Shown here in pieces: positions 25,001 through 53,803 of a DNA stretch of 64,000 nt. The notes under the pieces were generated by a model. It worked only from the letters and a program-made list of their open reading frames with translations. It was not told the DNA's origin and ran no database searches. The DNA comes from Haliotis rubra (taxonomy: Eukaryota). Position numbers and translations under genes: made by a program. Numbering within the stretch: the first letter of the stretch is position 1; every line of letters begins with the position of its first letter. Where the stretch lies: positions 186,001-250,000 of the forward strand of contig NW_025765792.1 of assembly GCF_003918875.1 (NCBI RefSeq). Reading direction: 5' to 3'.

Positions 25001-28000
25001 AGTTTGTAGATGAAAAAATTAAGGTCAGTAATCAATATATGTGAGAAATGTTCATTGATGCCTCAACAGTTATAGGTGCGAGGTTTGACATGTTTGAAAG
25101 AACATGTGTTTCCTGCATTCTTTCAAAATCATGTATATTTTCATCCAGCTGGCAAAGTTTATATCTTTAGTGACGTGCTGAAAATTAAAATTTAGTTAAC
25201 CTGGGAATTAGCATCTGATTCGTTTGACCAAAAAAGCACAGGCAATGGCGCTTCATCTTTTTGGTAAGGGTCATGAAAAATTGTACAAGGACTTAATGAG
25301 AGACTTCTTAAAACTTGACAAGCTGGAGGGAAGGATCATGATTTTTGGTAACTTAGTGCAACAAATACTCTCCTTTTTCTTTTGGCAGACATTAGGTACA
25401 GCTGCCTGCCCTCCCTATCATCTGGCCATCGTGATTGGAGGAACGTCAGCAGAGCTCACACTGAAGACCGTCAAACTGGCCTCCACACGATACCTGGATA
25501 CTCTCCCCTCTTCAGGTAATGATACGTTATAGGGATAACATTGTTCTGTAGCTTTGTGTGGCCTGTGAACTTTTGGTAACAAATTTTGGAGGTTCCAGGT
25601 CATCCCACTAGATGAAGATTTCAAACCAAAACCTTGTTTAAACCAAACCATACTGTTTGAGTTAAACCATACTGACTCACATGTTTTTCATTTATCAGGC
25701 AATGACCATGGCAGAGCTTTTCGTGACCTTGAACTGGAGCAGCAAATCCACAAACTGACTCAGAAAATGGGGATTGGTGCTCAGTTTGGCGGCAAATATT
25801 TCTGTCATGATGTGCGAGTCATCCGCCTACCGAGACATGGAGCTTCCTGCCCTGTGGGCATAGGGGTGTCGTGTTCAGCAGACAGACAGGTAAGGCTTGT
25901 TAGTTGGGTTGGTTAGGTAGCGAGGTGGCTAAAGTGTTTAACGCGTGAGACCTAAGTTCGAATCCTCTTTTGAGTCCCACTGGCTTGTCGTTGATGGAAC
26001 CACATTCAGTCAGATTTTCTATTTCTCAGAAAGTATCCTCAACATATTTTAGCAAGATGGCTTCTTCTTTAGGCACTTGGCAAAATAACAGAAGAGGGCG
26101 TGTTTCTGGAACAGCTGGAGACTGATCCCATCAAGTATCTTCCTGAGGTGGAGGCAGAGGACCTGGGAGGAGAGGTTGTGCAGGTAACATATTGTACCAG
26201 ATGGCTCAACTCAAACACAAATACCTGTGAAGATCCGGGTTAGAACTGGTTTTCAGCAACCCATGCTTGACGTAAGAGGCGACGAATGCTGTCAGGTGTT
26301 CAGGCTTGCTGACCTGGTTGATACATTTCATCGTATCCCAGTTGTGCAGATCGATGCTCACGCTGTTGAATCACTGGATTGTCTGGTCCAGACTTGATTA
26401 TTTACAGACCGCCCCCTTATAGCTGGAATATTGGTGAGTGTGGCGTTAAACAACATAAATCAAACACAAAACTATATGTGTTCTTATAAATCTACCAATA
26501 ACTGAAAAATTAAGAAAAAAATGTATTTGTTTTCCTGATATCCTGACTCATCATATTTTACACTTTGATCACAGAACCCAAAATGTGCCTCTTTACCGGC
26601 AGAGCAGCCACTGCCCTTGGTTACCAATCAGAGTTGTCTGTCCTTGATCCTCACTGCCTTCTCATTGCACAAGAGGATATTACTGTAATGAATATCTAAA
26701 TTCATGTAAAATTGTTGATCTGACCATGGGGCTTTTCAGATTGATTACACATTAAACCATTGTAAACACAGAATCGACGATAAATATGTAGCAGGTCAGA
26801 ATAGAGGTCACGCCTCAAATGAAAAAGTTTTAAAACTGCTGGGGATCTCTAATGGCAAATTACTTAATGAAATATAATTTCAAAATGTCAGTTAAATCAA
26901 TAAATGGAAAACCAACAATGCAGGATAATGAGTATGGCTGAGTCTCATTTCAAGCATATCAATTATCCTTGTGTAACCACGCCCATTTCTGGTGTCGCCC
27001 CGCCGTGATATTGCTAAAATCGGCGTAAAATCATACTTGCTCATTCCTTGTGTAACCACGCCCATTTTTGGTGCCCCCTGCCGTGATATTGCTAAAATCG
27101 GCGTAAAATCATACTTGCTCATTCCTTGTGTAACCATGCCCATGTTCAGTTTGGGGCTAGTTTTTTGGTGAAAGGTAACTTATTTTGCATTAATTGTGTC
27201 AGCAGCCTGATACTGAACATGAAACCCAACAAAAATTGTGACAACTTATGTTATTTAGGTGATTACCTTTGAATGTTGAATAAAAGACTTATGTCCCAGT
27301 GACTATATTGGAGGGTTCGGGGTTAACATTTGTTGCTACTAGACTAGTGGACTGGTGGGTCTTTAAATTTACTAGACCTGACCTAATGTCAACTAGATCA
27401 TACTGTTGGAAGACAAAACAAGCTTATTTTTATTATCAGCAGGATTATAGTACATACTAGAAGAACAAAGTATATTAAACACTAAACTATGTGATAATTG
27501 TTGCTTTCTTTTGTATATTATGAATACTGTATACCTTAACTTTTGATTTTCTGAAGAACGTTTATCATTAAACAGTAGCTTTTATTGTCTTTTTTACACT
27601 TGAATAAGCTTAATAACAGTCTTTGTAATAGTAAGGTCGTGGGTTTGATCCCCGACCGCGTCATACCAAAAGACGTTAAAATATGGTACTTGTTGGTCCC
27701 TGCCTGGTGCTCGACATTAATGGGTACAACAAGGACTGGTCGGCTCGGAGTCAGTATACTGTTTCTGAGTGGGGTATTCATGCTTCACTGCGGCATGGAA
27801 TCTCAGTGAACTAGCACTATAAAACCAGCTTCAGTCTGGGCTAGTACAAGCAGCCGCACATACACATACACTCGCATGCACGTCGTCATATGAGCGGAAT
27901 ATTCTCAAGCACGACGTTAAACCCAATTTCACCTTACCTCACCTTTGTAATAGTCATTATAATAGATGACGCATGGAAGATTTTTAAAAACGAATCAAAT

Positions 28001-30814
28001 ACAGTGATTTGAAACAGCATTCATTAACAATCTACACAACCAGTTGGGCTATCCAGACATGAATTTAACTAGACTGGACCAGCCATTTGCTGGACAATGT
28101 GTCGTGTGGATGTGCCTTAGTGTCGAACCCTGTATTGATCATCTTGTATCCCAGGTTGATCTGAACCGACCAATGAGCGAGGTGCTGCAACAACTTAACC
28201 AGTGTCCAATCAAAACTCGTCTGACGCTGACAGGGACGCTGGTGGTTGCGAGGGACATCGCCCACGCCAAGCTGCAGGAGAGGTTAGACAAGGGGGAAGA
28301 GATGCCCCAGTATATGAAGGACCACCCTGTGTACTATGCTGGGCCTGCCAAAACACCTGAGGTAAGGGGGGATAACTCTGCAATATTGACCATGAGTGGT
28401 ATCATTGCACAAATCTAGGGATAATTTTGTTGCATCGTGACCTGGGTTCGAATCCCAATTTGGGTACAATATGTATGGATTCTATTCTTGTTGTTCCCTT
28501 CTCTGTTATCTCTGGAAATTATTGCGAGAAATACACAAAGTATATATTGAATGTACATAAAAGATTGATGCCTATTTAACAGTATGTGTAGCAGTCCAGT
28601 TGAGAAGTGGTAGAAACAGGTGTTAACTGATTCTTCATCCAATCATTTGTATCAATGCTCCAGTCTTCATTCTCCAGACTGAAAGTTTTGAAACCAAGAT
28701 TTCATCTCAATTTTTCAGGGGCCGGTGGGACAGCCTAGTGTTTAAAGTGTTCGCTCGAAGATTTGGTTTTTTTATTCCCCATATTGGTAAAATGTGTAAA
28801 GCCTATTTCTGGTGTCCCCGCCGTGATATTGCTGGAATATTGTTAAAAGCAGCGTAAAACCATACTAACTCACTCACTCACTGACTGAGACTGACTGACT
28901 GACTGACTGACTCAATTCATCAGCACTATGCTTGTGCAGAAACAAGTAGCACAACTGGAGTATTTTGTCATTAAACAACAAACACATAATATGTTTGAAC
29001 CAGACATTTATATTCTCTCATCCAGGGATATGCAAGTGGATCGTTTGGACCCACGACAGCGGGCAGGATGGACTCCTATGTGAACTCGTTCCAGGCTGCT
29101 GGGGAAGCAAGGTCATGTTGGCCAAGGGCAACCGGAGTCGCCAGGTGAGTTCGGAGGGATAGGGAATTTACCGTTTGATTCTTAAAATAACCTTCAGGAA
29201 TTGGAAATGGATTTATCTATCTCAATGAAGTTGATTGGACAAACTTTTCAAGTTACAATTGCTTATTGTCTAGTTCATCATCAAGAAGGCCAAAAGTATT
29301 TCTCCTTACGGCCAAAAGTATTTCTCCTTACTGGCATACTTAAGTTTCTATATCTAACAACCAGCGTTGGAAGAGTGTCCACACAGGTAACCAAACTCCA
29401 TGTCCACATAGGTTGCCTATTTCCATCTCCACGAAGATAACCAACCTACACAGATAACTAAACTCTACGTTCACACAGATAACTAAACTCTGTGTTCACT
29501 CAGATGACTAAACTCTATGTTCACACAGATAACTAAACTCTATGTTCACACAGATAACTAAACTCTATGTTCACACAGATATCTAAACTCTGTGTTCACT
29601 CAGATAACTAAACTCTATGTTCACACAGATAACTAAACTCTATGTTCACACAGATAACTAAACTCTGTGTTCACTCAGATAACTAAACTCTATGTTCACT
29701 CAGATAACTAAACTCTATGTTCACTCAGATAACTAAACTCTATGTTCACTCAGATAACTAAACTCTATGTTCACACAGATAACTAAACTCAGACTCAGAT
29801 ACTAAACTCTATGTTCACACAGATAACTAAACTCTATGTTCACACAGATAACTAAACTCTATGTTCACACAGATAACTAAACTCTATGTTCACACAGATA
29901 ACTAAACTCTATGTTCACACAGATAACTAAACTCTGTGTTCACTCAGATAACTAAACTCTATGTTCACACCTGAATGTTCATACAGGTAACTAAAGCATG
30001 CAAGACCCATGGAGGGTTCTACCTGGGATCCATCGGGGGTCCAGCAGCCATTTTGGCCCAGAACTGTATCAAGAATGTCGAAGTCCTTGAATATCCTGAA
30101 CTTGGTAAGTTGTTAACCCCTTTCCCAAAACAAAGGTAGAGTAATGACAGAAGTCTTGCTCAGTATGACGTGAGAAAATGGAAGACTATAGCCTACTGGG
30201 TACCGCCTTGTTAGAAGGTTGTACACAGAGCCACTTATACCTGTGCCTTGCCTCTAGAAGGTTGTACACAGAAGCCACTTGGAGTATACATGGGCCTGTG
30301 ACATTGCCTCTAGCGGCGTAAAACCAAACTCAGTCAGTCTAAAAGGGGAGGATAATCATTAATTGCCTGCTTGATATGCTTGATAAAGTGTGAGTTGATG
30401 TGAGTGAGTGTGAGAATGACTTAAATGCTACTTGAAAGGACTGACAAGCCAAGGGATTTTGGGGTTTATGGCAGTGTTATCTTTTGTGAGCATTTGACAT
30501 TTTTGTCAAAGCTGGTTATTTGGTTTGTTATCTAACGCCACACACAGCAATATTGCACAGCTATATTGCGACTGTCTGTAAATAATCAGGAGTCAGGACC
30601 AGACAATCCAGTGATCAACAGCATGAGCATCAATCTACGCAATTGGTTTTGTCAAGGCAAAAGTATCTATGAAAGTTTTCATTTGGCAGTAATCCACCGT
30701 GGTTGTTTTGCAGGTATGGAGGCAATATGGCGAGTGGAGGTGGAGAATTTCCCAGCATTCATTGTGGTGGACAATAAAGGAAATGACTTTTTCCAGGAAT
30801 GGCAGCTGGAGTAA
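22042..30814 (+). CDS. fumA: Class I [4Fe-4S] fumarate hydratase (FumA/FumB-like), mitochondrial precursor, copy 1; 1-nt deletion in exon 10 as assembled
   Basis: 12 GT-AG exons: 22042-22225, 22712-22839, 23717-23855, 24557-24657, 24817-25023, 25389-25515, 25699-25889, 26073-26183, 28155-28361, 29026-29144, 29987-30104, 30714-30814. Motifs [92 protein letters not shown]. Exon 10 is 119 nt versus 120 nt in copy 2. Confidence 0.95.
23107..23639. mobile_element. Tc1/mariner (pogo/Tigger-like) MITE
   Basis: TIR CAGTCAAATCCCGATGAGTCGAAT with TA duplication. The paralogous intron in copy 2 (about 40385) has the empty TA site. Confidence 0.9.
26967..27143. repeat. Tandem duplication (about 79 bp) containing the SINE-B 3' portion
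   Basis: CCTTGTGTAACCACGCCCATTT..GATATTGCTAAAATCGGCGTAAAATCATACTTGCTCATT occurs twice, plus a partial third copy. Confidence 0.75.
29376..29970 (+). repeat. 25-bp minisatellite ATGTTCACACAGATAACTAAACTCT, intron 10 of copy 1
   Basis: About 20 homogeneous units abutting exon 11. Confidence 0.95.
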
Positions 30815-38052: not shown

Positions 38053-38860
38053 CATTCTCAAGACATTGACATTGACCACATTTGGAGTAGAACTGTCAGT
38101 TTGATGATTGCTGTAGGGGTCGTTGTCGGCACGGGTACCACAGACACCCGAGGTACGTTTCTGTATACAGAAATGTACATAATCAAGTCAAATTCAGAAA
38201 CGTACTTGGTGCCCCAAACGATGGATGAGTCCATTTTTCTAAACCCAAAATCTAGAAAATCTACCGCTTCATGCTGTACTTTCCTTTTGCTTGATTTCGA
38301 GTGATACTGTGCCTCGCGACTTGAATATTCATCCTTGTGTATGCTTGTTCTTATATAAGCAGTCCAATGAATCGCATACAGTATGACAGTTCTAATGAAG
38401 AAAACGGTGCAGTGCATAATGGAATCGTCCTAGGGTACATTTCTGTATTCTAATTTTGGCTTGGGTCCATATCTGTGTACTGAAACGTACCTGGGGTACA
38501 TATCTGTAGTCCCCTTGCCAACGACCCCTTCAACCACATTAGCCAGTAGAGTGTATCTTGAATCGACTTTGATGAATTCTCTTCGCCCGTTCATTATGTC
38601 TTTGTTTCAGAAGGGATGTCATCATCTCTATTGCACCATTATTTTATTCAGCACAGACTCTCACTTACAAGAGAAGTTGATTTCGATGTTTATTTTAGTG
38701 CCATACAAAATTACAAATAGGGCTAAAATTGGCAGTATGCTTGTATTCATAAATATAAAAAGAGAAACATTTGACAGATAAGGATGCAGGCCTATAAAGC
38801 CTTATTCACTCATTCGCTCAAGCACTGAACAACATTTATCGATGGGCATTTTGTTTTCAG

Positions 38861-41800
38861 ATGCTTGGGTCAGGGGTCAGAGGTCGTGCCCTGCAGGGGG
38901 CGTGGCAAGTTATTCAGAACCACCTGCGACAGATACAGACGAGTGGTGTACAAGCAGCAGCGGCTGCCGACGTCAAGCCATTCTTCTACCAGGATATCTT
39001 TGAACATGAGAAGAAAGCAGAAGTCCCATGGAAAAGGTTGTCAGGTTTGTCTTCAAAAGTTCAATTTGTCTTATTTGATTTGAATTTATCTGCTCGGTTG
39101 TCGGATAAGTTTAGTTTTACGCCGCGCTCAGCAATATTCCAGCTATATGGCGGCGTTCTGTAAATAATCGAATCTGGACCAGACAATCCAGTGATCAACA
39201 GCATGAGCATCGATCTACGCAATTGGGAACCGATGACATGTGTCAACCAAGTCAGCGAGCCTGTCCACCCGATCCTGTTAGTCGCCTCTTACGACAAACA
39301 TGGGTTACTGAAGATCAATTCTAACCCGGATCTTCACGGGTATTAAAACCAGAAAGGCTTTCTTTTTAATAAAGTTCAGACAGTTGAAATGAATTTGCTT
39401 CAACGAAGTTCTCAAAATGGGTATATTCCAAAACACCGGCACATACGCTTTTATTTTTCACATAAATTCTCATGATTGAATTGCGCAATGTTTTTACATG
39501 CCCCCTCCAATCATGGACATTTTGTCATTCTACATGTTATTTGTATGTGGTGACAATGTCATTGTTTTCGTCCTTGTAGGCGACTATGTATCGACGTTTG
39601 ATGTGAAGGGAAGGAAGGTTCTTCACATACAACCTGAAGCCTTGACCTTGCTGGCAGAGAATGCCATGATTGACATTTCTCATCTCCTTCGACCCGGACA
39701 TCTCCAGGTGATATGATCACAACAATATTTCTGTTTCATAATTTTATCTGATTTTTTTTTTAATGTTTTGAAGCATTTGATATGCAAGATTGGAATGGGG
39801 AATTGGTAAATATTCTTATGTACAAAATTGCTGACCCCCAACCCTAGTACATGTGTACAAAACTGATTACCCCCGTCCCCAGAACAAAATTGGTGACACC
39901 CCCCTTAAAATCATCACAAATCCCCCCACCCCAAGCCATAAATTATAAACGGTCCCTAAATATATACAATTTATAGTTATAATTTTCAATTCATCTACAA
40001 TATAGATTTCATCTGACATAGTCGCAATCATAGGTTTCTGTTGTACATGTTGTACACAAGGGACGCAACTCTGTACAGCGAATTGTGGCACCTCTGAGGA
40101 AAGGGTCAGTGATGCCCCTCCCATCCCTTGTTTTGATGGACAAGGTCACATATCATCAGTACTTCAACTCCTCTTACTAAAATCAGATATTTTGCTCCTT
40201 TCAGGTGTGATGTTAGTACAGTCATCTAACATAATCATAATGATAAGTTCTTGGTATGCACAAGGGACATAACTCTGTTCACTGAATTCTGGCACCTTCA
40301 GGGAAAGGGCCAATAGTGCCCATCCCATGTCTTTGTGGACAAGGACACAGATCATCACTACTTCAACTTTTTTTTATTTATTCAGATATTTTCCTCCATT
40401 GGTGTGGTGCCTTTGCAGTGAGATCTGACTAACTAATGGTCTGTTTTGTGTTTTTATTGCAGCAACTGTCAAATATCCTTAAAGATCCTGACGCCTCCAG
40501 TAACGACAAGTTTGTGGCTCTGGAACTGTTGAAGAATGCAAATGTTGCAGCTGGGATGGTACTGCCTGGTTGCCAAGATACAGGAACAGCTATCTGCATT
40601 GGTAGGTATTCAATTTCTTCACTATTCCAGAGTAAGGTTTCAATGGGCAGAATCATTTCATTACTCATATCTTGACTTGGCCGATTTTGAATCATTGCTG
40701 AAGAAAATATGAGTAGAATGAATTGGTGTACTCTTTCCATTGCCATGTAGTTGTATACAAATCAAACATCAATAGCATTTGGGGTACTTGGGCTATCACA
40801 AGGCCCCCAGAAACGTCCGGTCAGACCACCAACATCTCTTGACTGTTCCAAGAACTAAACTGAAACTCTTTGGTGAAAAGGCTTCAGTGCATCAGTCCCA
40901 ATACTTTGGAACACTCTCCCTCCTGCCATAAAGAATTCACCAACTATTGTCTCTTTTAAGTCCCAGTTAAAAACCCACCTGTTTGCTAAATATTACTCTG
41001 AGTGATCTCTTCCAGTCCTGTTGAGACGTGTTTTACTGTTTGTACAGTATATCAAGTTTGTAGTGTGACAGTATATCAAGCGCTTTGAGCATGCATGCTG
41101 GATGGACTATAGCGCTATACAGGGGCGTAGGAACGGGGGGGCGCTTGGGTGGGCTTAGCCCCCAACTTTTTAAAACGAAACCATATCTACTTTACCATAA
41201 CTACAATTTCATTTTGATTTTCAATACTTTTCATAAATTGGCCCCCCACTCTGATAACCGTTCCTACGCCCCTGCTATACAAATACCCCTATATATTGAT
41301 CAGATTTAGAGTTATCTCCCTTCCACAATACACCCTCATTCCCTGTGTCCGTGTGTTTGTGTGTGTCTGTTATGAGGACTGCTTGTACATGTACTGTTAT
41401 TGTGAACAATATGAACAGGGCTCTTAGGTAAGTGACTCTCAGAGTTTGAGTTCGAATCCCGGATGGGACTCAACCTAACAGAAGTACTAGAATCAGTACT
41501 TTATTGAGAAAGTGTAATCCCAAATATCACATATGTTAAACTTGAATATGTCCTTGGTCTTGCAGCAGGTCTTGGCTAAGGCCATCATGGTGATGTCTTT
41601 CAATGTTTGCCTCCAGGTAAGAAAGGTCAGTATGTGTGGACAGAGGGGAGGGATGAGGATGCTCTTTCAAGAGGGGTATACAACACTTACACCAAGAGGA
41701 ACCTCAGGTATTCCCAGGTAATAATGAGTGAGTGAGTGAGATTAGTTTCATGCCGCTTTTAGCAATATTCCAGAAATATCACAGCGGGGAACACCGGAAA

Positions 41801-44800
41801 TGGGCTTCACACATTGTACCCATGAAGGGAATCGAACCCAGATCTTCAGTGTGACGCTTTAACCACTAGGCTACCCCACCGTCCCTGGTAATAATTGACA
41901 GATGAACTGTGTATTGATAAACCATTAACAAGAAATGTTTGGTTACTTTTAAGTTTTCCTTAAATATGCAGTGAGCTTTTCTAATTTGGCTGCTGGTTCT
42001 AAAACACTCACCTCTTACACTCTCATATGAATATCCACCTAGATGGCGCCACTGGACATGTTTAAAGAGGTCAACACGAAGACAAACCTTCCTGCCCAGA
42101 TCGAGCTGTACGCCACAGATTCCTCTCAGTATGACTTCCTGTTTATGGCCAAGGGAGGTGGCTCGGCCAACAAGACATTCCTCTATCAACAAACAAAGGC
42201 GTTGCTGAATCCTGAAAGACTTATGAAGTTTGTAGATGAAAAAATTAAGGTCAGTAATCAATATATGTGAGAAATGTAACATATGTTATATTTGGGATTA
42301 CACTTTCTCAGTAAAGTACAGATTCTAGTACTTTTTAAGGTTGAGTCCCATCCGGGATTCGAACCCACACCCTCAGAGTCAGGCCCCTAATCGCCAGCAC
42401 ACAATGTCAGACGCCTAGACCGCTCAGCCACCGTGGCTTCCACAAAAATGGAAGTCGGACAACTGGTAGTCCAGACTGCGGACTTTGTGTACCCCTCTGA
42501 TAAGTGTCAGCCGCTGTGGCTGAGCGGTCGATACGATGTGATTCTGAAGAATCTGCTCACGGTAATAAAGGGCATTAACTCTCTCTTGACAAACATGAAG
42601 GCAGTCCCGTGATTGTAATTTATTCCACCTTAGACCATGACACTCCCCGCACCCAAAGGTCTGTCTGAACCACACACTCCTCAGCATAACGTTCACCACG
42701 TCTACACCAAACACATAATCGTCCGTCAGCATTACATAGATGAAGACGTGACTCGTCAGTGACTACCACACCATGCTATTGTTGTAACCTTTACTGAAAA
42801 TGCCTGCTAGCCCATTGTATACGCTCATTACGGTGTCTGTCAGTCAGAATTGGTCCAACGTAAGGACGTCGAGTATGGAGCCCTGTAGCGTGAAAACGGC
42901 GTCGCATGGAGTCATCGCTGATGACCCCAACGTCAACCCTGAACTAGTTCAGCAGTCCTGGCAGTCGGCAGTGTTCAATCACCGATATGGACAAGGTGAA
43001 TATGGCGATCCTGATGGAACGTCGTAACACGTTGTTGCCAACGTCATTGAAGGTCACGGGTGCTGCCTGTCTACTGATGTCGTCTATGAAGCCTAATGAT
43101 GGTGGAGTGGCCAAGTCCAAGTTGTCGAGCAGCATTCCTGCTGCTGGTGCCATCCTGAATCATGCCTAGTGCACGTTCTCCTTTGTGAGGTGTTAACCTC
43201 GGCATCTCTGTCCTCGTTTCACAATCGTTAGTGAAGCAATGAGAATCGGTTCTCATACACCTGCTTTTAATGTCACAGTCGGTATGATTTCAGAATGAAA
43301 TTCGCGCTTCTTTCATGGCGTGGCTGCATGTTGATGCAAGTTGAGTCATACTGTGGACAGGAATTTGCTTCTAAACCATTTTTTTCAACTGGACATGCCC
43401 TTCGACTTCATGTTAGTTATATTCATTGATCATTGTCATGCTGAAATCCATCTTGATGAAAATATGGACAATTTTAGACTGGTGCGTTTTCAATGATATT
43501 CAGTATATTTGAGCAACAGACGCCGGTCAGTTATGATTGGTGATACTAAATCTGAAAGTATCACGCTACTCTGTGGGGTTCCCCAAGGATCTGTGCTAGG
43601 TCCAGTCCTGTTTGTGATGTACACAAGTAGTCTCAGCTCCAGCATCAGACAGTATGGGCTGAACCACCATGCATATGCTGACGACACCCAGCTTTATCAA
43701 GGTTTCAAAGCAAGCGAAACAGTCGATGCACTTGTAAGATATACTGATTGCACTAAATCAATAAAAACATGGATGACATCAAACATATTAAAACGATGGA
43801 AACACTGAGGCCTTACTCGTTGGACCCAGACAGCGCATTCAACAGTGGAAAATCATGTCAGTGGGTGTTGGAGACCTGGGTGTCATCTTTGATTCTCCCT
43901 TGTCAATGGAAGCCCTAGTTATCAAGTGTGCCAGACCTGCTACTTCCATCTAAGAACTATTGGTAATATTCGCCATCTTATTACCACAGACGTAACAAAG
44001 ACACTAGTCCAACTACTCGTGATGTCCCGCATTGACTACAGCAACAGTCCGTTGTATGGTTTGAGTCAGGAACTGCTGAACAAACTCCAGAAGGTACAAA
44101 ATAGGGCAGCTCGTATTGTGAGATGTCACATAACACAGGTATTGATGTCCCTACACTGGCTTCCAATAGAAGCCCGGATCCACTTCAAGATCTTGTGTTT
44201 TGCCTACCACTGTTTGAATGGTACATCACCGAGCTATCTATCAGAACAGATCTCTCCATACCAGCCTTCACGATGTCTAAGGTCTGAAAACCAATGCCTA
44301 CTTGCAGAACCAAACTCACGACTAAAATCCTACGGCAACAGATCGTTTCAAGTAGCAGCATCTCAGTTATGGAACTCACTACCTCAGAACATAAAAGAAT
44401 CCCCCACCCTTGAGACATTCAAAACCAACCTAAAACCTTTCTCTTCAGAAAGTTCTATCCCCACGAACTATCTCCTCCCGTGAACTTCTCATCTGTGACT
44501 ATTGTAGCGCCTTGAGCATGCACCTTTGTGGATGGAACCCAGCGCAATATAAATAGACATTATTATTATTGTTATTATATGAATGAATATGTATCACTTG
44601 TTGAAAGGACAGGTGTTTTTTGCATTGTTTCAATATAATGTATATTTTCATCTGGTTGGCAAAGTGAACATAAGGCCTAAAAAGAAAAATGTTGTGGTTC
44701 CGATTACCCGACCGACCCTGGTGCCGACCCTATTTTTAAAAAAAAATATAATAAGCGTTCAGATACCATTGCTTTTTCCAGGCACCGACGGACATCGGTC

Positions 44801-47800
44801 ATTCTGGTAGTGAAAGTTGACATGGTGGCCGCAAGCTTGATTAAATACACAATTAAACATTGATAAATGTGTTATTAGTTTGTACTTTACTTCTAAAAAA
44901 AGTAAAAAAATATATTAAAAATTCCTATCTACCCAAATTTTAAAGAGCTGTAATCGGAACCACAACATTTTTTATTTGGCCAAAGTGACATGTAGAATAT
45001 TGAAAGTTGGTTACTGATTGGGTTCAGATTCTGTGACCAAAAATATATTGCTTTTTGACAATGTAATTGTCTAGTTTCTTGTAGATATTGTATCTATTTT
45101 ATGCATACTTTACCATGTTTTCAGATTTCTCATTTGAAACCAAATAGTCATTTGCATGATAATTACAATGTTAAAATATGAAATGTTTTTTTCTGAACAG
45201 TTAGGGACAGGTCCTTTATTGTAAGGGGAACAAATTGGGCAGGGTAGAAATATGACTGTCTCAAGGGAAAGTGATCTAAAATAATATGGATAGTTGGGAG
45301 GTTCAGGAAAAATGGACATTTTATGACAAAATGTACAGTTCTTTTCTATTTCGTCTTTTTGGTGAGGGTCATGAAAATTTGTACAAGGACATAGGGAAAG
45401 TCATCCCAAAACTTGACAAGCTTGAGGGGAGGATAATGATTTGTAGTATTTCAGTGCAACAAAAGCCTCTGACTCTTTCTTCTTCCAGACATTAGGTACA
45501 GCTGCCTGCCCTCCCTATCATCTGGCCATCGTGATTGGAGGAACGTCAGCAGAACTCACATTGAAGACCGTCAAACTGGCCTCCACACGATACCTGGATA
45601 CTCTCCCCTTGTCAGGTAATGATGGTGGTGGTGGAATTGGGTTTAACGCCGTGCTTGAGAATATTTCGCTCACATGACGACGTGCATGCGTGTGTATGTG
45701 TTTGTGTGGCTGCTTGCACTAGCCCAGACTGAAGCTGGTTTTATAGTGCTAGCCCACTGAGATACCATGCCGCAGTGAAGCATGAATACCCCACTCAGAC
45801 ACATTATATTGACTCCGAGCCGACCAGTCCTTGTTGTACCCATTAATGCCGAGCGCCAGGCAGGGACCAACAAGTACCATATTTTAACGTCTTTTTGGTG
45901 TGAGGAGACCATGGATCGAACCTGCGACCTTCCGCTCTCCAGGCGGACGTCAGGTAATGATACGTTATAGGGATAACATTGTTCTGTAACTTTGTGTGGC
46001 CTGGGAACCTTTGGTAACAAATTTTGGAGGTTCCAGGGTATCCGACTAGATGAAGATTTCAAACCAAAACCTTTTTGATGCAGAGTAAACCATACTCACT
46101 CACATGTTTTTCATTTATCAGGCAATGACCATGGCAGAGCTTTTCGTGACCTTGAACTGGAGCAGCAAATCCACAAACTGACTCAGAAAATGGGGATTGG
46201 TGCTCAGTTTGGCGGCAAATATTTCTGTCATGATGTGCGAGTCATCCGCCTACCGAGACATGGAGCTTCCTGCCCTGTGGGTATAGGGGTGTCGTGTTCA
46301 GCAGACAGACAGGTAAGGCTTGTTAGTTGGGATGGTAAGGTAGCGAGGTGGTTAAAATGTTTAACGATGAGACCTAAGTTCGAATCCTGTTTTGAGTCCC
46401 TCTGAATTGTCGTTGATGGAAACACATTGAGAAGGGCTGCAACGATTTGGTTCATCGGAAATCGAATCTGACACCTTAGTTTCGATTTTCAGTAACCATT
46501 ATCACTATTTCGATTCGATATTTGAGTGATGTTCTGTGTTTAAACATCATATCGTATATATATGAAAAAGGTTACATCATTTACATTCCTGATTTTCTAG
46601 TGAAATCTTGGAAAAAGTTTTCAGTGTGATAAGTGTTTTTAAATAAACTCTGAAATCTGATGTTTTACTTGTATGAAGAATCGAATCGAAAATGATCGAA
46701 TCGAGGGTCCAATATCTGGAAAGCTCGTAAAACTAAAATCAGAATGACAAGGTCTGGGTGAATCGTTCGCAGCCCGAACATTGAAGTGCAGCCCTAACAG
46801 AGATTTTCTATTTCTCAGAAAGTATCCTCAACATATTTTAGCAAGATTGCTTCTTCTTTAGGCACTTGGCAAAATAACAGAAGAGGGCGTGTTTCTTGAA
46901 CAGCTGGAGACTGATCCCATCAAGTATCTTCCTGAGGTGGAGGCAGAGGACCTGGGAGGAGAGGTTGTGCAGGTAACATATTGTACCAGATGGCTCAACT
47001 CAAACACTAATACCTGTGAAGATCTGGGTTAGAACTGGTTTTCAGCAACCCATGCTTGTCGTAAAAGGTGACTAATTGGATCGGGTGGTCAGGCTTGCTG
47101 ACTTGGTTGATACATCGTATCCCAGTTGCGTAGATTGATGCTCACGCTGTTGATCACCGGATTGCCTGATCTAGACTTCGTTATTTACAGGCCGACTCCA
47201 TATAGCTAGGATTTTCGTGAGTGTGGCGTTGAAGAACAAAACAAACAAAGCAGGTCAGAATAGAGGTTACATCTCAAATGAAAATGTTGTTTAAGCTGTT
47301 GGGGATCCCTAATGGCAAATTAAATAATGAAATATAATTTCAAATCTGTTAAATTAATGAATATGAAACCAACAAAGCAGGAGTCTGGTTGAGTCTTATC
47401 TATCTCCGTTATCCTTGTGTAACCGTAAAGAAATATACAGTGAAAGGGGAAGAAATATTACATCAATGCGTTAAGCAGTAGAGCTGAAACGGTATGCTCT
47501 TCACGGTACGGTATGTAGCATTTATTAAGAGAATTTAACATTTTCCTTCCATTGTTGGTACGGGTCTCGCTCAGTTCATCTCAAATCTAAAATAGACAAA
47601 ATTGTTAACACTGCAAGTAAAATCGCTGGAGTCAGATTTGAATTTTTATCATCAATATATGAGCGGCAACTCGTGAATCAAGCTGTAAAAATCATATCTG
47701 ACCGTACTCACTGCTTAAATTCGGAATACAACCTCCTCCCTTCAGGCCGCCGCTACAAAGTTCCAATTGTGAAAACTAAGAGAGACCGTACATCCTTTAT

Positions 47801-50800
47801 TCCAAGTACCATATCTCTCTTAAACAAATGCGAAGATACCTAAATCAAAGAATTTATGTAAATATGTTTGGTATCTCTCTAATGTGTCAGTAGCTCTGCT
47901 GATGTAACACAAATTCCTGAAAAGGCATTAGAGTATTATTCTATACCATTCTATTCTATCTTCACGGTTCAGTCTGTTTCGGTTCGGTATATGATAACTT
48001 ACTTCCAGGAAAAAAAACGGCCGTCGAGCAAAGAAATACATAGATTTTGACAAAGTGATTCGATTTCTAGACATTTTAGAAAAGGTTTAAAATATCAATA
48101 AAATGACGGTACGAAAACCGAAAATACTGAATTTTTAGATTGCATTACGGTGTAGTACCTAAACCGAGGGCAAAATACAGCGGTTCTACTAATACTGCAG
48201 TTTACCGTTTCACCCCTATTAAGAAGGGTTTAGTTGTTAACTGTGATGTCAATAGAGCAGCTGTCAGTTTGCAAATGGCAATAGTTGGCATCCTTAGAAT
48301 ACCCATGAAGCTTTTCAAGATAATACAAATATACTATTAGTCTGAAACACAATTAGGAATTGTTCCGTGAAGTTCAAAATAGTAGCTGCTTAGAGGATTG
48401 TGAAATTAATTATGTATGCATTCTCATTTGCAAACCGATATTCAGTCACTGAACTAAAAATTTGTGAAGCATGTAATTTCTTATCTACGTTCTGTACTCT
48501 CTCTCTTATGCTCGACAGCAGAGTGGAAACAAACTGTAACTGAAGTTTTTTGCCTCTCGTGTACCATTCGCCCGAACACACCCTGCTGCACCCATATCTA
48601 GACAGTCTGGCAGCTCCTGAAAAGCGTGAAGCTTGTCCTAAGATTGACCATGTGATCCCTTTGTGTAGTTATTCTTTTTCTTGTCGCACTAGGGTGCTGA
48701 TGTGCTGTGAACTGTGGCAAATGAACTGACTTAAATAACCCTTAACATCATTGGGAAAGAAGATTCAACGTCAAGAAAAAGAAAAGATTGCATGGACTGC
48801 AAGAAGACGTTCTCCATCTCGGACCCACATGCATCCTGCATTGACTGCAATGGTCTTTGAGATTGGAAGACCAGGTACCGCCTATGCGCCAAGTTGAATG
48901 ATAACAACTTTGCTAACTATACTCCAGACATAAGTCAGATGAATCAGGCTCCACTTCAGCTTAGAGATCGGAGAAAGAAAGATCTGATAAGAAGTCACAC
49001 AGAGCTTCCTCTTTGATGTCTGATTTTCTGGATGCACCTTACTTAAGTGAGTATTTGAGACGAAGCAGATGCAGCAATCAGAAACGCCCGCTAAATCAGA
49101 CCTCATGGGACAAACGCTACAGAGTAGACCTGTTTCGCCAACCATGGTCGAGTCCTTGCCTATTCAACGGGATCATCCATGACTTATCTACCAATGTGGA
49201 GAGAGATACTCAGTTCCAAGTCTCGGTCAAACTTCTGAAACTACAGAGGATGCAAGTACAAGACTCAGATGCCTGGATCAGTATGTTGAGACAAATCCCG
49301 ACTTATGAGATTCCTTTCGGGGCAGAAACTGCAGAGTTTTCCTGGGTCATAGCGAAAAATCAACTGCCAGGGCAACCGGATAGACTCTTCACTTTACCGC
49401 CATTGTCCACCATACTCGGGCCTGACGATACTCTGTCCAGTAAGAGCTCTGAGGATACACATCGCTGCCTCGCAAGACTGTCGCAGGTTACATAATCGCA
49501 TGTTTATCCCGCTCTCAACAGCCTCTAGAGCAGAAGTCTCCCACACCATGTTGGCCTTCTGTATGAGATCAACCATCCTCTAGGCCTTCGCCAGGTTCCC
49601 CGTCCAGCTGCGTCGAACCCTCATGAGACTCGGGCCTAGCATCTACAATGGATTTTCACAGCAGCTATTCGTTGACATCTATTATGGAGGGATGTTTCTG
49701 GACATCAGAGACAGTCTTTGTCCCCCACTACGTACGAGACCTCTCAGTGACTGATGTAGAAGGACTCCATCAGTTTGGGCCCTTTTTACTGGCGCATCAG
49801 CTGTCCTTGGCCCAACAACACAGACAGTGTAACGTTATCCTCTGTCCATGGAATCGGTGTTACCTTGTAAAAGTGAATCAAGGTGTCTTCATACGACTTC
49901 ATCTTGGTCCTACTTTCCTTGGGCATGGATCTTCCTCGCCTAGAACCACACTGGAGTATTGCAGTGCATTCATCGCTGGGCAACTTCATCATAGACTGAG
50001 AGGCCAGTCTTGTACTACGATGCAGAGGTGATTGACACTCATACTCGTTGACCTCCACCCTAGCAAGCAATCACGTCAGTGGAGTATGAATACCGAATTT
50101 CAGTGGATTCCGATGCGCTCTGTTCCTGGCTGCCGGACATATCCTTGATCAAGCTTAAGCAAAGGAGCATGGGTCATTCGATGAATGTTAAACAGTTGAG
50201 ATAACCGAACCGTCCGCCTTTCGCCGTTATATGTGATCGCAGGGGTGGTTTCGAAGCAGGGGCTGGCCTGACTAGAGTCACAAGACAAGAAGAAAGTCAG
50301 GGAAACTTGTCTGACAAATGATACAGTGTGAAACGCACATAAACACGCACAGCCAATGTCAAATTGATCATTGCTGACACCTTTTCATGATTTTTGCTGC
50401 CCATGTTTAGTTTTGGGCTAGTTTCTCGGTGAAAGGTTACTTTATTTTGCACAAATCGTGTTGGCAGAAATGCTTTGTAAACTGCCTGAAACCGAACATG
50501 AAACACGACAACAATGGTGACAACTAATGTTATTTAGGTGACTACCATTGACTGGCGAATACAAGACTTATATCCCAATGACTACTTTGCCCATCTTGTA
50601 CCCCATGTTTTATAGGTTGATCTGAACCGACCAATGAGCGAGGTGCTGCAACAACTTAACGAGTATCCAATCAAAACTCGTCTGACGCTAACAGGGACGC
50701 TGGTGGTTGCGAGGGACATCGCCCATGCCAAGCTGCAGGAGAGGTTAGACAAAGGGGAAGGGATGCCCCAGTATATGAAGGACCACCCATTGTACTATGC

Positions 50801-53800
50801 TGGGCCTGCCAAAACACCTGAGGTAAGGGAAAAAACTCTGGAATAAAGACCATGATCGGTAGCATTGCACAAATACACGGATATTTTTGTTGCATCTTGA
50901 CCAGATTTCGAATTCCAATTTGGGATTTAATTCTTCCTGATATCTCTGGAATATTGAGAAAAATATACAAATATATAATAAATGTACATAAAAGACTGAT
51001 GCCTATTTAACAGTATGTGTAGCAGTCCAGTTGAGAAGTGGTCAGAACAAGTGTCAGCTGATTCTTCTTCCAACCATTTGTATCAATGTTCCAGTCTTCA
51101 TTCTCCCGACAGTGAATGTTTTGTAGCCAAGATTTCATCACAATTCTTCAGCACTATGCTTGTGCAGAAATGAGTAGCACAACAGTAGTATTGTGTCATT
51201 AAACAAAAAACAAATAATATGTATGAACCGGACATTTATTTTCTCTGATCCAGGGGTATGCAAGTGGATCATTTGGCCCCACATCAGCGGGCAGGATGGA
51301 CTCCTATGCAAACTCGTTCCTTGCAGCAGGGGGAAGCAAGGTCATGTTGGCCAAGGGCAACCGCAGTCGCCTGGTCAGTTAGGAGGGATAGGGAGTTTGC
51401 CAACTGTAAACCTCAAATCTTTCATGCTCAATGTTCGATTCTTAAAATAACTTTCAGGAATTGGAAATGGTTTTATATCTCTCAATGAAGTTCATGGGAC
51501 AAACTTTTCAAGTTACATTGGCTTCTTGTCTAGTCCATCATCAAGGTTTTCTTCTCAAGTATTTCTTCTTGTTGGGATTCTTAAGTTTCTATATCTAACA
51601 ACCAGTGTTAGGGGTTGTCCACACAGGTAACCAAACTCCCTGTCCACGCAGGTAACCAAACTCCCTTTCTGAACAGGTAACCAAACTCCATGTCAACACA
51701 GGTTACCAACTTCACTGTCCACAGAGGTAACTAAACTGCATGTCCACGCAGGTTACCAAACTCCATGTCCGAACATGTAACCAAATTACAAAACTCCATG
51801 TCCACACAGGTAACCAATTTCCATGTCCACACAGGTTACCAAACTCCATGTCTACACAGGTAACCAAATTCCATGTCCACACAGGTTACCAAACTCCATG
51901 TACACAGGTAACCAAACTCCATGTCTACACAGGTAACCAAATTCCATGTCCACACAGATAACCAAACTCCCTGTGCACGCAGGTAACCAAACTCCCTCTC
52001 TGAACAGGTAACCAAACTCCATGTCTACACAGGTTACCAAATTCACTGTCCACAGAGGTAACTAAACTGCATGTCCATGGAGGTTACCAAACTCCATGTC
52101 CGAACATGTAACCAAATTACAAAACTCCATGTCCACACAGGTAACCAAATTCCATGTCCACACAGGTAACCAAACTCCATGTCCAAACAGGTAACAAACA
52201 CTAAGTCCACACAGGTAACAAACCTCCATGTTCATACAGGTAACGAAAGCATGCAAGACCCACGGAGGGTTCTACCTGGCATCCGTCGGGGGCCCAGCAG
52301 CCATTCTGGCCCAGAACTACATAAAAAATGTCGAAGTCCTTGAATATCCTGAACTTGGTAAGTTGTTAACCCCTTTCCCAAAACAATTGTATGGAACTGA
52401 CAGATGTAAGTCCATATTAAACTGCATTCGATTACAATAATCATAGCTCTTCAAACCCAGGGTTTCAATCTACAACGCCGTGTTTTCAATATGATGATCA
52501 TTACTATATATTAATGTCTCGGCCTGAGGACTGACTAAATGAATCAGGGCTCAGGACAATATGGAAATATTCATAAACTTGTGTTGCATCAGAACCACGA
52601 ACTGGACCAATGGTCACAAAGATCATGTATGAGTGAGTGAGTTTAGTTTTACGCCGCACTCAGCAATATTCCAGCTATATGGCGGCGGTCTGTAAATAAT
52701 CGAGTCTGGACCAGACAATCCAGTGATCAACTGCATGAGCATCGATCTGCGCAATTGGGAACCGATGACATTTGTCAACCAAGTCAGCGAAACTGACCAC
52801 CCGATCCCGTTAGTCGCCTCTTACGACAAGATAGTCGCCTTTTTATGGCAAGCACATGGGTTGCTGAAGACCTATTCTACCCCGGATCTTCACGGGTCAA
52901 GATCATGTATAGTCTGATGTGAAAATAGTGACTGAGTTTAGTTTTACGCCGCACTCAGCAATATTGCAACTATGTGATGGCGGTCTGTAAGTAATCGAGT
53001 CTGGACCAGACAATCCAGTGATCAACAGCATGAGCATCGATCTGCGCAATTGGGAACCGATGACATGTGTCAACCAGGCCAGCGAGCCTGACCACCTGAT
53101 CGCATTAGTCCCCTCCTACGACAAGCATGGGTTACTGAAGGTTCATTCTAACCCGGACCTTCACGGGTCTGATGTGAAAATATGGAAGACTGTACTCTAC
53201 ATAACATATGTTATATTTGGGATTACACTTTCTTAGTAAGGTACAAATTCTAGTACTTTTTGTTGGGTTGAGTCCCATCCGGGATTTGAACCCACACCCT
53301 CAGAGTTTGGCACCTAATCACCAGCACATAAAGTCAGCCGCCTAACCCACTAAGCCACTAAGACTTCCACCAAAATGGAAGTCGGACAACTGGTAGTCTA
53401 GACTGCGGACTTTGTGTACCCCTCTGATATGTTTATACTCTACGGCTTTGAACCAAGTTTAGAGGTTGTACACAGAGCCACATATGCAACTGTGACATTG
53501 CCTCTAAGAGATGAGGACAATCATTAACGGCCTGCTTGATAAAATGTGCGTTCTAGAATGACTTCAATGCTACTTGAAAGGACTGACAAGCCAAGAGATA
53601 TTAAGGCAGCGTAATCCTTTGTCAGTATTCAACATTTTTTTCAAGGTAAAAGTGTCAGAGAAAGTTTTCATTTGGCAGTAATCCACCGTGGTTGTTTTGC
53701 AGGTATGGAGGCAATATGGCGAGTGGAGGTAGAGAATTTCCCAGCATTCATTGTGGTGGACAATAAAGGAAATGACTTTTTCCAGGAATGGCAGCTGGAG

Positions 53801-53803
53801 TAA
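38861..53803 (+). CDS. fumA: Class I [4Fe-4S] fumarate hydratase, mitochondrial precursor, copy 2 (intact, 577 aa)
   Basis: 12 exons: 38861-39044, 39580-39707, 40463-40601, 41617-41717, 42043-42249, 45489-45615, 46122-46312, 46862-46972, 50616-50822, 51254-51373, 52240-52357, 53703-53803. Total 1734 nt in one open frame. Same intron positions as copy 1, and all three Fe-S cysteine motifs are retained. Confidence 0.96.
40795..41119 (+). mobile_element. LINE (L2-like) 3' fragment
   Basis: FGEKASVH../[27 protein letters not shown], plus a tail like that of the 43.5-kb LINE. Confidence 0.7.
41120..41274. mobile_element. MITE with 5-bp TSD (hAT5-like)
   Basis: TIR CAGGGGCGTAGGAACGG, TSD CTATA. 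Nested at the end of a LINE tail. Confidence 0.75.
42277..42500 (-). mobile_element. Dispersed repeat family D with an internal tRNA-like segment
   Basis: Near-identical copy at about 53200-53430, partial copies at 24205-24310 and 41425-41537. Contains GGTGGCTGAGCGG...GGGTTCGAATCCC box motifs. Confidence 0.65.
42590..43205 (-). pseudogene. Tc1-family transposase remnant
   Basis: [50 protein letters not shown]: a Tc1-type HTH N-terminus followed by stops. Confidence 0.75.
43478..44578 (+). mobile_element. 5'-truncated L2/CR1-group LINE (RT C-terminal half)
   Basis: [52 protein letters not shown], with frameshifts and a (TAT)n tail. Confidence 0.92.
45624..45948 (-). mobile_element. SINE family A copy at the exon-6 donor of fumarase copy 2
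   Basis: Reverse complement of family A. 13-bp TSD GTCAGGTAATGAT (45611-45623, 45949-45961). Absent from copy 1. Confidence 0.88.
47500..47960 (+). mobile_element. LINE 3' fragment (Rex1/Babar-like)
   Basis: [14 protein letters not shown]...[32 protein letters not shown]. Confidence 0.6.
48600..50300 (-). mobile_element. Decayed retroelement-like insertion (possible gag), copy-2-specific
   Basis: More GC-rich than the flanks, broken ORFs, degenerate knuckle [15 protein letters not shown]. Absent from copy 1 intron 8. Confidence 0.35.
51615..52235 (+). repeat. 25-bp minisatellite ATGTCCACACAGGTAACCAAACTCC, intron 10 of copy 2
   Basis: More than 20 units abutting exon 11. Confidence 0.95.

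What the first reader, a model, noticed from the sequence alone, without database searches (positions are those of the whole stretch)
50616..52357. Paralog divergence clusters in the C-terminal domain, including GPTT to GPTS in copy 2: possible neofunctionalisation
Seen (hand alignment): exons 2-8 (about 334 codons) differ by 2 residues and exon 12 by none, but exons 9-11 (about 148 codons) differ by 11. Copy 2 changes [16 protein letters not shown] to [16 protein letters not shown] (Ser codon 51284-51286), NRSRQ to NRSRL, and LGSIGG to LASVGG. At these positions copy 1 matches E. coli FumA as recalled. Known: the PTTxxR and AKG motifs line the substrate pocket, and this family includes mesaconase and D-tartrate dehydratase activities. 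Inference: altered specificity or kinetics; alternatively, gene conversion homogenised only the 5' exons.
Basis: partly seen in the sequence, partly recalled or inferred. Interest (0 to 1): 0.78.

Follow-up and report, generated by a model that had tools for sequence, protein, structure and literature searches.

The report
Mosaic tandem class I fumarase paralogs
Two neighbouring copies of an iron-sulfur fumarase gene in an animal genome stay nearly identical, probably by copying sequence from each other, except in two small active-site exons where copy 2 has drifted; this is a fairly ordinary pattern and does not show a new enzyme function.

Summary
Two tandem 12-exon class I (FumA-type) fumarate hydratase genes differ by 2 residues in exons 2-8, 11 in exons 9-11 and 0 in exon 12. 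Copy 2 carries GPTS, NRSRL and LASVGG at the stated coordinates.

The cluster follows silent divergence. dS is 0.04 in exons 2-8 and 0.21 in exons 9-11 (0.30-0.39 in exons 10-11). The ratio of replacement to silent changes is the same inside and outside the cluster. Public contigs also show exon 9 and exon 12 differences swapped between the copies in other samples, which fits ongoing gene conversion.

The stable island is only exon 10, intron 10 (a minisatellite) and exon 11. All 7 replacements there are derived in copy 2, and 5 hit residues at least 94% conserved in homologues. One is Thr to Ser at the position of Leishmania FH Thr468, a substrate-carboxylate ligand (Thr in 199 of 199 homologues). 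So constraint on copy 2 is relaxed or shifted, but a new function is unproven.

All contigs from four public runs carry that G, so it is probably an assembly error. Both copies are transcribed.

The parts
22042..30814 (+). Copy 1 of the class I fumarate hydratase gene, start codon to stop. Its 12 coding exons are 22042-22225, 22712-22839, 23717-23855, 24557-24657, 24817-25023, 25389-25515, 25699-25889, 26073-26183, 28155-28361, 29026-29144, 29987-30104 and 30714-30814.
   Evidence: Pfam PF05681 and PF05683 match exon by exon. A spliced 1965-nt RNA contig covers exons 9-12 (record 24).
38861..53803 (+). Copy 2 of the gene, with an intact 577-codon reading frame. Its 12 coding exons are 38861-39044, 39580-39707, 40463-40601, 41617-41717, 42043-42249, 45489-45615, 46122-46312, 46862-46972, 50616-50822, 51254-51373, 52240-52357 and 53703-53803.
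   Evidence: NCBIfam FumA-type matches for single exons. A copy 2-type exon 11 contig occurs in RNA-like run X24 (record 21).
29101..29104 (+). G-run in copy 1 exon 10 that is one G shorter than in copy 2 (51329-51333). It frameshifts copy 1 as assembled.
   Evidence: Every contig of four runs puts the extra G in at this place (table 4), so it is probably a homopolymer assembly error.
50616..50822 (+). Copy 2 exon 9 (copy 1: 28155-28361). It has 4 residue differences, dS 0.09. Their states are swapped between copies in other samples.
   Evidence: (places 28200, 28204, 28229, 28328-28329).
51254..51373 (+). Copy 2 exon 10 (copy 1: 29026-29144). It carries T476S (codon 51284-51286), V484A, Q488L and Q505L, with dS 0.39.
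51616..52248 (+). 25-nt minisatellite filling intron 10 of copy 2 (copy 1: 29376-29970). It lies between the two diverged exons and cannot be aligned as orthologous sequence. It may act as a barrier to conversion tracts.
52240..52357 (+). Copy 2 exon 11 (copy 1: 29987-30104). It carries G519A, I521V and C532Y, with dS 0.30. The two exon types are distinct in both DNA runs.
   Evidence: (records 4, 5, 14, 20, 21).
53703..53803 (+). Copy 2 exon 12 with its stop codon (copy 1: 30714-30814). It has no residue difference and one silent difference, which is not fixed in other samples.
   Evidence: place 30742.

Best explanation
The locus is a lineage-specific tandem pair of single-subunit [4Fe-4S] class I fumarate hydratase genes in an animal genome that also has the usual class II enzyme. 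Short gene-conversion tracts centred on exons keep exons 1-9 and 12 nearly identical. A segment of about 1.2 kb (exon 10, the minisatellite intron 10, exon 11) has escaped homogenisation and keeps an older divergence. The amino-acid cluster is mainly a by-product of this mosaic history. Within the island, only copy 2 has changed, and its changes are mostly conservative ones at otherwise near-invariant positions, including Thr to Ser at the second Thr of GPTT. This points to relaxed or slightly shifted constraint on a redundant duplicate. Copy 2 most likely still hydrates fumarate, with at most modestly changed kinetics. The mosaic silent divergence, the polarity of the changes, the intact frames and the transcription are shown. 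Conversion as the cause, and retained fumarase activity in copy 2, are inferred.
For: - Only two class I FH loci exist in the 1.38-Gb assembly, and both are in this window. A class II FH lies on another contig.
- dS is 0.041 in exons 2-8, 0.214 in exons 9-11 (0.39 in exon 10, 0.30 in exon 11) and 0.056 in exon 12. Omega is 0.08-0.16.
- Silent changes are enriched 8-fold in exons 10-11 (p = 4e-7), while N:S is the same as elsewhere (p = 1.0).
- Flanking-intron divergence is roughly uniform (0.15 against 0.12). Synonymous sites are below it in exons 1-9 and 12 (p = 3e-6) and above it in exons 10-11 (p = 0.009).
- In public contigs, the exon 9 and exon 12 differences appear in swapped or mosaic combinations, on single contigs at roughly summed depth. 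Exons 10 and 11 form two distinct contig types in both DNA runs.
- All 7 exon 10-11 changes are derived in copy 2. The homologue counts are T476 199/199, V484 185/187, Q488 148/152, G519 156/157 and I521 147/156.
- E. coli FumA, FumB and even TtdB keep PTT.
- The cluster cysteines and the Asp/His pair are kept.
- Copy 2 has an intact frame and canonical splice sites, and its exon 11 type occurs in an RNA-like run.
Against: - Heterogeneity in dS could partly reflect local mutation-rate variation rather than conversion.
- Introns near the homogenised exons are more diverged than those exons' synonymous sites. Long conversion tracts are therefore excluded, and selection on synonymous sites cannot be ruled out.
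- Exon 10-11 synonymous divergence exceeds that of their own flanking introns. This is what selection against conversion of these exons would also produce.
- Five hits at near-invariant residues in one copy are more than unchanged constraint would allow.
- The contig evidence comes from Logan contigs, not raw reads, and the depth-based inference of collapse is indirect.
Confidence: 0.62

Rival explanations
1. Copy 2 is functionally diverged, and selection maintains that divergence. Its exon 10-11 residues, including Ser at the carboxylate-binding Thr position, change kinetics, substrate preference (for example mesaconate or D-tartrate) or regulation. Selection removes conversion tracts that would erase them, which creates an island of divergence.
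For: - The asymmetry is 7:0, and 5 of the 7 changes hit sites at least 94% conserved.
- The changed Thr corresponds to Leishmania FH Thr468 and MjFH Thr81. That residue hydrogen-bonds a substrate carboxylate, and a non-polar mutation there abolishes activity.
- Synonymous divergence in exons 10-11 exceeds that of their flanking introns (p = 0.009).
- The copy 2 exon 11 type is shared by two organism labels.
- Copy 2 is intact and transcribed.
- RNA-like runs differ in which paralog's words they hold.
- The family is known to be promiscuous for mesaconate and D-tartrate.
Against: - Omega is about 0.13 pairwise, and about 0.3 at most on the copy 2 branch. N:S equals that of the rest of the gene.
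- The hits are random with respect to conservation (P = 0.49), as expected from relaxation.
- Only one of the nine substrate-contacting residues changes, and it keeps its hydroxyl.
- No known family member with another specificity has Ser there. TtdB also keeps TT.
- I521V is not fixed: a contig in run X1 lacks 4 of the 10 exon 11 differences.
- The minisatellite offers a purely mechanical barrier to conversion.
Confidence: 0.22
2. Copy 2 is a redundant duplicate that is losing function. The hits at invariant residues are the first steps of decay, and the enzyme is already impaired.
For: - Replacements fall on near-invariant residues at random with respect to conservation.
- Copy 1 matches the family consensus at 49 of 50 conserved exon 10-11 sites, against 45 of 50 for copy 2.
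- Some RNA-like runs hold copy 1 words but almost no copy 2 words.
Against: - Copy 2 has an intact 577-codon frame, canonical splice sites, and all cluster and catalytic residues.
- About three quarters of the expected neutral replacements are missing, so omega is well below 1.
- Copy 2 is transcribed.
- Copy 2 exon 11 is identical between the window and organism B.
- Most of the changes are chemically conservative.
Confidence: 0.1
3. Copy 1 is the pseudogene, because of the frameshift in exon 10, and copy 2 is the only working gene. In that case the differences reflect decay of copy 1.
For: The window sequence lacks one G at 29101-29104. This shifts the frame and brings an early stop.
Against: - Every contig covering the site in four runs has the extra G. 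These runs include two DNA-like and two RNA-like runs from two organism labels (table 4).
- A spliced copy 1 mRNA contig carries the intact frame (record 24).
- Copy 1 keeps the ancestral residue at all 7 exon 10-11 sites.
Confidence: 0.04
4. The two copies are diverged haplotypes of one gene that the assembly wrongly placed in tandem.
For: - DNA runs show the two exon 10-11 types at roughly equal depth.
- One RNA-like run shows only the copy 1 type. Both observations would also fit alleles.
Against: - Both copies lie in one gap-free stretch. The only N runs are at 4218-4382 and 11984-12118.
- The copies have different intron lengths and SINE insertions, and a non-homologous spacer of about 8 kb separates them.
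- The 5' flanks are largely unalignable.
Confidence: 0.03

Closest known systems
E. coli FumA / FumB (single-subunit class I fumarate hydratases; NCBIfam NF011919 / NF011920)
   Same: Both window copies are about 66% identical to them over about 538 residues. Single exons match the FumA-type models. The N-terminal Fumerase and C-terminal Fumerase_C domains are in the same order. Copy 1 shares the PTT, V, Q, NRSxQ and LGSIGG states.
   Different: The window genes belong to an animal and have 12 coding exons. They have an N-terminal extension of about 38 residues that looks like a mitochondrial presequence; this is an inference and was not tested. Copy 2 has PTS, A484, L488, L505, A519, V521 and Y532.
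Leishmania major fumarate hydratase 2 (PDB 5L2R and mutant series 6UNZ-6UQN)
   Same: Exons align without gaps to the solved chain. Cys133, Cys252, Cys346, Gln134, Asp135, His334, Thr467, Arg471 and Lys491 are all conserved in both copies. The numbering comes from a chain offset of 36, which was checked on six residues.
   Different: Copy 2 has Ser at the Thr468 position. The paper read here reports a non-polar substitution of the equivalent MjFH Thr81, which was inactive, but no Thr-to-Ser variant.
E. coli TtdB (L(+)-tartrate dehydratase beta subunit)
   Same: It is a distant member of the same C-terminal domain family and keeps the GPTT motif.
   Different: It is the separate beta subunit of a two-subunit enzyme and is much more diverged. 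It gives no precedent for Ser at this position, so PTS does not point to a tartrate-type specificity.
Class I FH genes of other animals (Arion vulgaris, Solemya velum, Dicrocoelium dendriticum entries; exon-level ORFs in public contigs)
   Same: They are 77-83% identical in the C-terminal domain. They share intron positions at the exon 9 and exon 11 borders. The literature already lists class I FH as sparsely present in multicellular eukaryotes alongside class II.
   Different: All sampled relatives carry the copy 1-type states (PTT, LGSIGG, QNC). The copy 2 type was seen only in the window and its close relatives.

Membership tests
Single-subunit class I (FumA-type) fumarate hydratase | N-terminal Fumerase domain (PF05681) and C-terminal Fumerase_C domain (PF05683) in one polypeptide | tested here: met
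   Exon-wise matches over the Pfam cut-offs for both copies, in collinear order. The exons join into one 577-codon frame in copy 2.
Single-subunit class I (FumA-type) fumarate hydratase | Best match to FumA/FumB-type models rather than to two-subunit FH or TtdAB models | tested here: met
   NF011919 / NF011920 are the top hits for every exon tested, far above the TtdB and two-subunit models. The whole-protein cut-off could not be applied to single exons.
Single-subunit class I (FumA-type) fumarate hydratase | Three cysteines that bind the [4Fe-4S] cluster (LmFH Cys133, Cys252, Cys346) | tested here: met
   Aligned to the PDB 5L2R chain at positions 169, 288 and 382, which is native numbering plus 36. 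The two copies do not differ at these three cysteines.
Single-subunit class I (FumA-type) fumarate hydratase | Catalytic and substrate-binding residues (Gln134, Asp135, His334, Thr467, Thr468, Arg471, Lys491) | tested here: inconclusive
   All are present in copy 1. Copy 2 keeps them all except Thr468, which is Ser. The hydroxyl is retained, but the effect is unknown.
Single-subunit class I (FumA-type) fumarate hydratase | Oxygen-sensitive fumarate/malate interconversion activity | not testable with these tools
   This needs anaerobic enzyme assays.
Paralog pair undergoing interlocus gene conversion | Mosaic silent-site divergence along the gene | tested here: met
   pS is 0.05 in exons 1-9 and 12 against 0.27 in exons 10-11 (Fisher p = 4e-7).
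Paralog pair undergoing interlocus gene conversion | Paralog-specific variants found on the other paralog's background in other individuals | tested here: inconclusive
   The exon 9 places 28200, 28204, 28328 and 28329 and the exon 12 place 30742 show copy 2 letters on otherwise copy 1-type or collapsed contigs. These are contigs only, with no phased reads.
Paralog pair undergoing interlocus gene conversion | Paralogs group by species rather than by copy in the converted parts | not tested
   No close outgroup DNA could be fetched.

The most novel reading that the evidence does not exclude
Copy 2 is a selection-maintained enzyme variant of an animal class I fumarate hydratase. Ser replaces an otherwise invariant substrate-binding Thr, alongside four other changes at near-invariant sites. 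The two active-site exons are shielded from the gene conversion that homogenises the rest of the pair. This island of divergence would mark a real shift in kinetics, substrate preference or oxygen tolerance, possibly coupled to different expression of the two copies.
Probability: 0.2. Interest if true: 0.55.

Novelty: new member of a known kind. Interest (0 to 1): 0.3.

Why it matters
If copy 2 were shown to differ in function, it would be a natural experiment at an invariant active-site residue of class I fumarases. It would also be a tidy example of selection resisting gene conversion in an animal metabolic gene. On the present evidence it is mainly a caution. A cluster of amino-acid differences between young paralogs can simply follow mosaic silent divergence, and a hand alignment can pass over an assembly frameshift. 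The pair could serve as a small test case for conversion-aware dN/dS analysis.

Tried and rejected
- **Copy 1 as a pseudogene.** Rejected. All contigs in four runs restore the missing G, and a spliced mRNA contig exists.
- **Exact-product look-up of the copy 2 exon 9 ORF, to fetch related contigs.** Nothing is on record.
- **Search for copy 2-type exon 11 ORFs in other taxa.** 139 hits were found. All those inspected are copy 1-type (LGSIGG, QNC), and none is close enough to serve as a DNA outgroup.
- **Representative-library search with exon 9.** It gave many exon-level fragments and bacterial full-length proteins. These were useful for conservation counts but not for branch-specific dS.
- **Branch-specific dN/dS and GENECONV-type tests with outgroups.** Not possible without close outgroup DNA.
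- **Structure tools for the full protein.** I therefore did not fold the protein or measure distances for the seven sites. Mapping is by sequence alignment to PDB chains only.
- **PTS as a mimic of a known alternative-specificity relative.** Rejected. FumB and TtdB keep PTT.
- **Long-tract conversion of a 5' block.** Rejected. Introns next to the homogenised exons are 7-27% diverged.
- **Earlier notes of the scan near this place.** They gave nothing on the paralog divergence itself.
Full report
**What is there**

The window (contig C902 of a 1.38-Gb, 2855-contig eukaryotic assembly) holds the only two class I fumarate hydratase loci of the genome. Pfam Fumerase and Fumerase_C match exon by exon in two collinear series. 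A class II fumarase lies on another contig.

I rebuilt both genes from peptide anchors and GT-AG sites.
- Each gene has 12 coding exons.
- Copy 1 spans 22042-30814 and copy 2 spans 38861-53803. Both are on the + strand, with a spacer of about 8 kb.
- Copy 2 reads as an intact 577-codon frame.
- Single exons hit the FumA-type NCBIfam models first.
- The proteins are about 66% identical to E. coli FumA and FumB.
- Alignment to the Leishmania major FH chains (5L2R series) places Cys133, Cys252, Cys346, Gln134, Asp135 and His334 in both copies.
- Closest named eukaryotic homologues in the searches are from molluscs (Arion, Solemya) and a flatworm.
- Exon-level ORFs from many public contigs share the exon 9 and exon 11 borders.
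- The literature already records class I FH as sparsely present in multicellular eukaryotes, usually beside class II.

**Check of the observation**

| Region | Codons | Residue differences |
|---|---|---|
| Exon 1 | 61 | 4 |
| Exons 2-8 | 335 | 2 |
| Exons 9-11 | 147 | 11 |
| Exon 12 | 33 | 0 |

- GPTT to GPTS (TCA at 51284-51286), V484A, Q488L, Q505L (NRSRQ to NRSRL), and G519A with I521V (LGSIGG to LASVGG) are all present. There is also C532Y.
- E. coli FumA and FumB, taken from an annotated record rather than from memory, match copy 1 at these exon 10-11 positions.

- Copy 1 exon 10 is 119 nt, against 120 nt in copy 2.
- One G is missing from a G-run (29101-29104, against GGGGG at 51329-51333). 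As assembled, copy 1 shifts frame after ...SFQAAG and soon reaches a stop.
- I laid Logan contigs of four public runs on 28100-30850. Every contig covering the place puts the G back:
  - X1: 177.3 + 96.9 of 274.1 depth
  - X2: 100.6 of 100.6
  - X6: 33.9 of 33.9
  - X24: 15.5 of 15.5
- One 1965-nt contig of X6 is a spliced exon 9-10-11-12 copy 1 transcript with four mismatches.
- The frameshift is therefore most likely a homopolymer error of the assembly, or at most a private variant. Copy 1 is expressed with an open frame.

**Is the cluster more than mosaic divergence?**

Nei-Gojobori estimates:

| Region | dS | dN |
|---|---|---|
| Exons 2-8 | 0.041 | 0.0033 |
| Exons 9-11 | 0.214 | 0.035 |
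| Exon 9 alone | 0.09 | - |
| Exon 10 alone | 0.39 | - |
| Exon 11 alone | 0.30 | - |
| Exon 12 | 0.056 | 0 |

- Silent changes are 8-fold enriched in exons 10-11 (Fisher p = 4e-7).
- The ratio of replacement to silent changes is the same there as elsewhere: 7.5:15.5 against 10.5:16.5 (p = 1.0). For exons 9-11 against exons 2-8, p = 0.28-0.72.
- Omega is about 0.13-0.16 throughout.

**Evidence on conversion**

- Flanking-intron divergence is roughly uniform along the gene, 0.15 around exons 10-11 and 0.12 around the others.
- Synonymous sites lie well below that level in exons 1-9 and 12 (p = 3e-6) and above it in exons 10-11 (p = 0.009).
- Homogenisation is therefore centred on exons and uses short tracts. 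It is not a 5' block.
- The contigs add direct hints of exchange:
  - In X2 and X24, the exon 9 places 28200 and 28204 (Q412E, C413Y) carry copy 2 letters on otherwise copy 1-type contigs.
  - In X1, 28328 and 28329 (V455L) do so.
  - The single exon 12 difference (30742) is the copy 2 letter in three of the four runs.
  - In both DNA-like runs, exon 9 is a single contig at about the summed depth of the two exon 11 contigs, as if the copies were identical there. This last point is an inference from depth.
- Exons 10 and 11, by contrast, form two distinct contig types in X1 and X2.
- The stable paralog-specific island is therefore exon 10, intron 10 and exon 11, not exons 9-11. Intron 10 is a 25-nt minisatellite in both copies and cannot be aligned as orthologous sequence.

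**Polarity and conservation**

In up to 269 homologues gathered, the copy 1 residue dominates at most of the changed exon 10-11 positions:

| Position | Copy 1 residue | Homologues with it |
|---|---|---|
| 476 | Thr | 199/199 |
| 484 | Val | 185/187 |
| 488 | Gln | 148/152 |
| 519 | Gly | 156/157 |
| 521 | Ile | 147/156 |
| 532 | Cys | 125/154 |
| 505 | Gln | 102/165 |

- All seven exon 10-11 changes are derived in copy 2 (7:0, p = 0.016).
- Five fall on the 50 of 79 sites that are at least 94% conserved. This is what random hits would give (P = 0.49). Copy 1 matches the consensus at 49 of these 50 sites, and copy 2 at 45.
- In exon 9 the polarity is mixed. C413 and E445 are derived in copy 1, and L455 is derived in copy 2.
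- No other taxon sampled has the copy 2 type.
- Organism B shares all 10 copy 2 exon 11 letters with the window. An X1 contig has 6 of them and lacks I521V.

**Structural meaning**

- With a chain offset of 36, checked on Cys133, Cys252, Cys346, His334, Arg471 and Lys491, Ser476 sits at LmFH Thr468.
- In the paper read, Thr467 is the proposed catalytic base.
- Thr468 (MjFH Thr81) is one of nine residues within hydrogen-bond distance of malate. It contacts a carboxylate, and replacing it with a non-polar residue abolished activity.
- Ser keeps the hydroxyl. None of the other six changes is among those nine residues.
- E. coli TtdB also keeps PTT, so PTS does not resemble a known alternative specificity.

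**Reading**

- The amino-acid cluster is mainly the shadow of a mosaic history, with conversion everywhere but one short island.
- On top of that, copy 2 alone has accepted changes at sites the family otherwise never changes. About three quarters of the expected neutral replacements are still removed.
- This fits relaxed or slightly shifted constraint on an expressed, intact duplicate.
- A selection-protected functional variant is not excluded. The excess of silent divergence in exons 10-11 over their own introns and the 7:0 asymmetry point that way. The minisatellite offers a mechanical alternative, and no test here shows positive selection.

**Expression note**

- RNA-like runs X6-X10 hold about 17% of the words of the copy 1 exon 9-11 region but are not among the holders of the copy 2 region.
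- X24-X27 hold 23-28% of the copy 2 region.
- X24 contains both exon 11 types.
- This may reflect different expression of the copies or copy-number variation. It was not resolved.

**Limits**

- All read evidence is from assembled contigs of coded runs. Only the one read-laying run was used on copy 1.
- No close outgroup DNA was available, so silent changes could not be assigned to branches.
- The full spliced protein could not be passed to the folding tools.

Noticed in passing
window 29101-29104: Copy 1 exon 10 has a G-run one base shorter than copy 2, which frameshifts the gene as assembled. All public contigs laid there carry the extra G, so this is probably a homopolymer assembly error. 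Other homopolymer errors may exist in this assembly.
   Followed up: yes
window 29376-29970 and 51616-52248: A 25-nt minisatellite (about 24 copies) fills intron 10 of both paralogs. Its unit resembles the exon 11 acceptor region, and the arrays differ between the copies. It lies exactly between the two unhomogenised exons.
   Followed up: partly
runs X6-X10 against X24-X27: RNA-like runs of one study split into two groups. One group holds copy 1 exon words only, and the other also holds copy 2 words. This may reflect tissue- or stage-specific expression, or presence/absence of copy 2.
   Followed up: partly
window 28229: The window has G here in copy 1, but all four runs and copy 2 have A. 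It is either a private variant or another assembly error.
   Followed up: no
window 22028-22041 and 38847-38860: Both start codons are directly preceded by a good splice-acceptor sequence (pyrimidine tract followed by cag). An untranslated upstream exon is therefore likely. The 5' flanks of the two copies are largely unalignable, so their promoters may differ.
   Followed up: no
window 4893-6042 and 10073-11172: Long G/T-rich minisatellites (units of about 53 nt and 21 nt) with strong GC skew. They lie near the two N runs (4218-4382 and 11984-12118).
   Followed up: no
window 52632-52830, 52927-53125, 37627-37820, 39108-39297, 32887-33090 and others: Many copies of one SINE-like element of about 200 nt (80-95% alike) sit in introns and spacers. 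They account for much of the length difference between the paralogs' introns.
   Followed up: no
G000:C1180:148183-148341: A class II fumarase (FumaraseC_C domain) is present elsewhere in the genome, so the class I pair is not the only fumarase.
   Followed up: partly
window 12831-13300: A 25-nt tandem repeat array (about 19 copies) lies upstream of copy 1.
   Followed up: no
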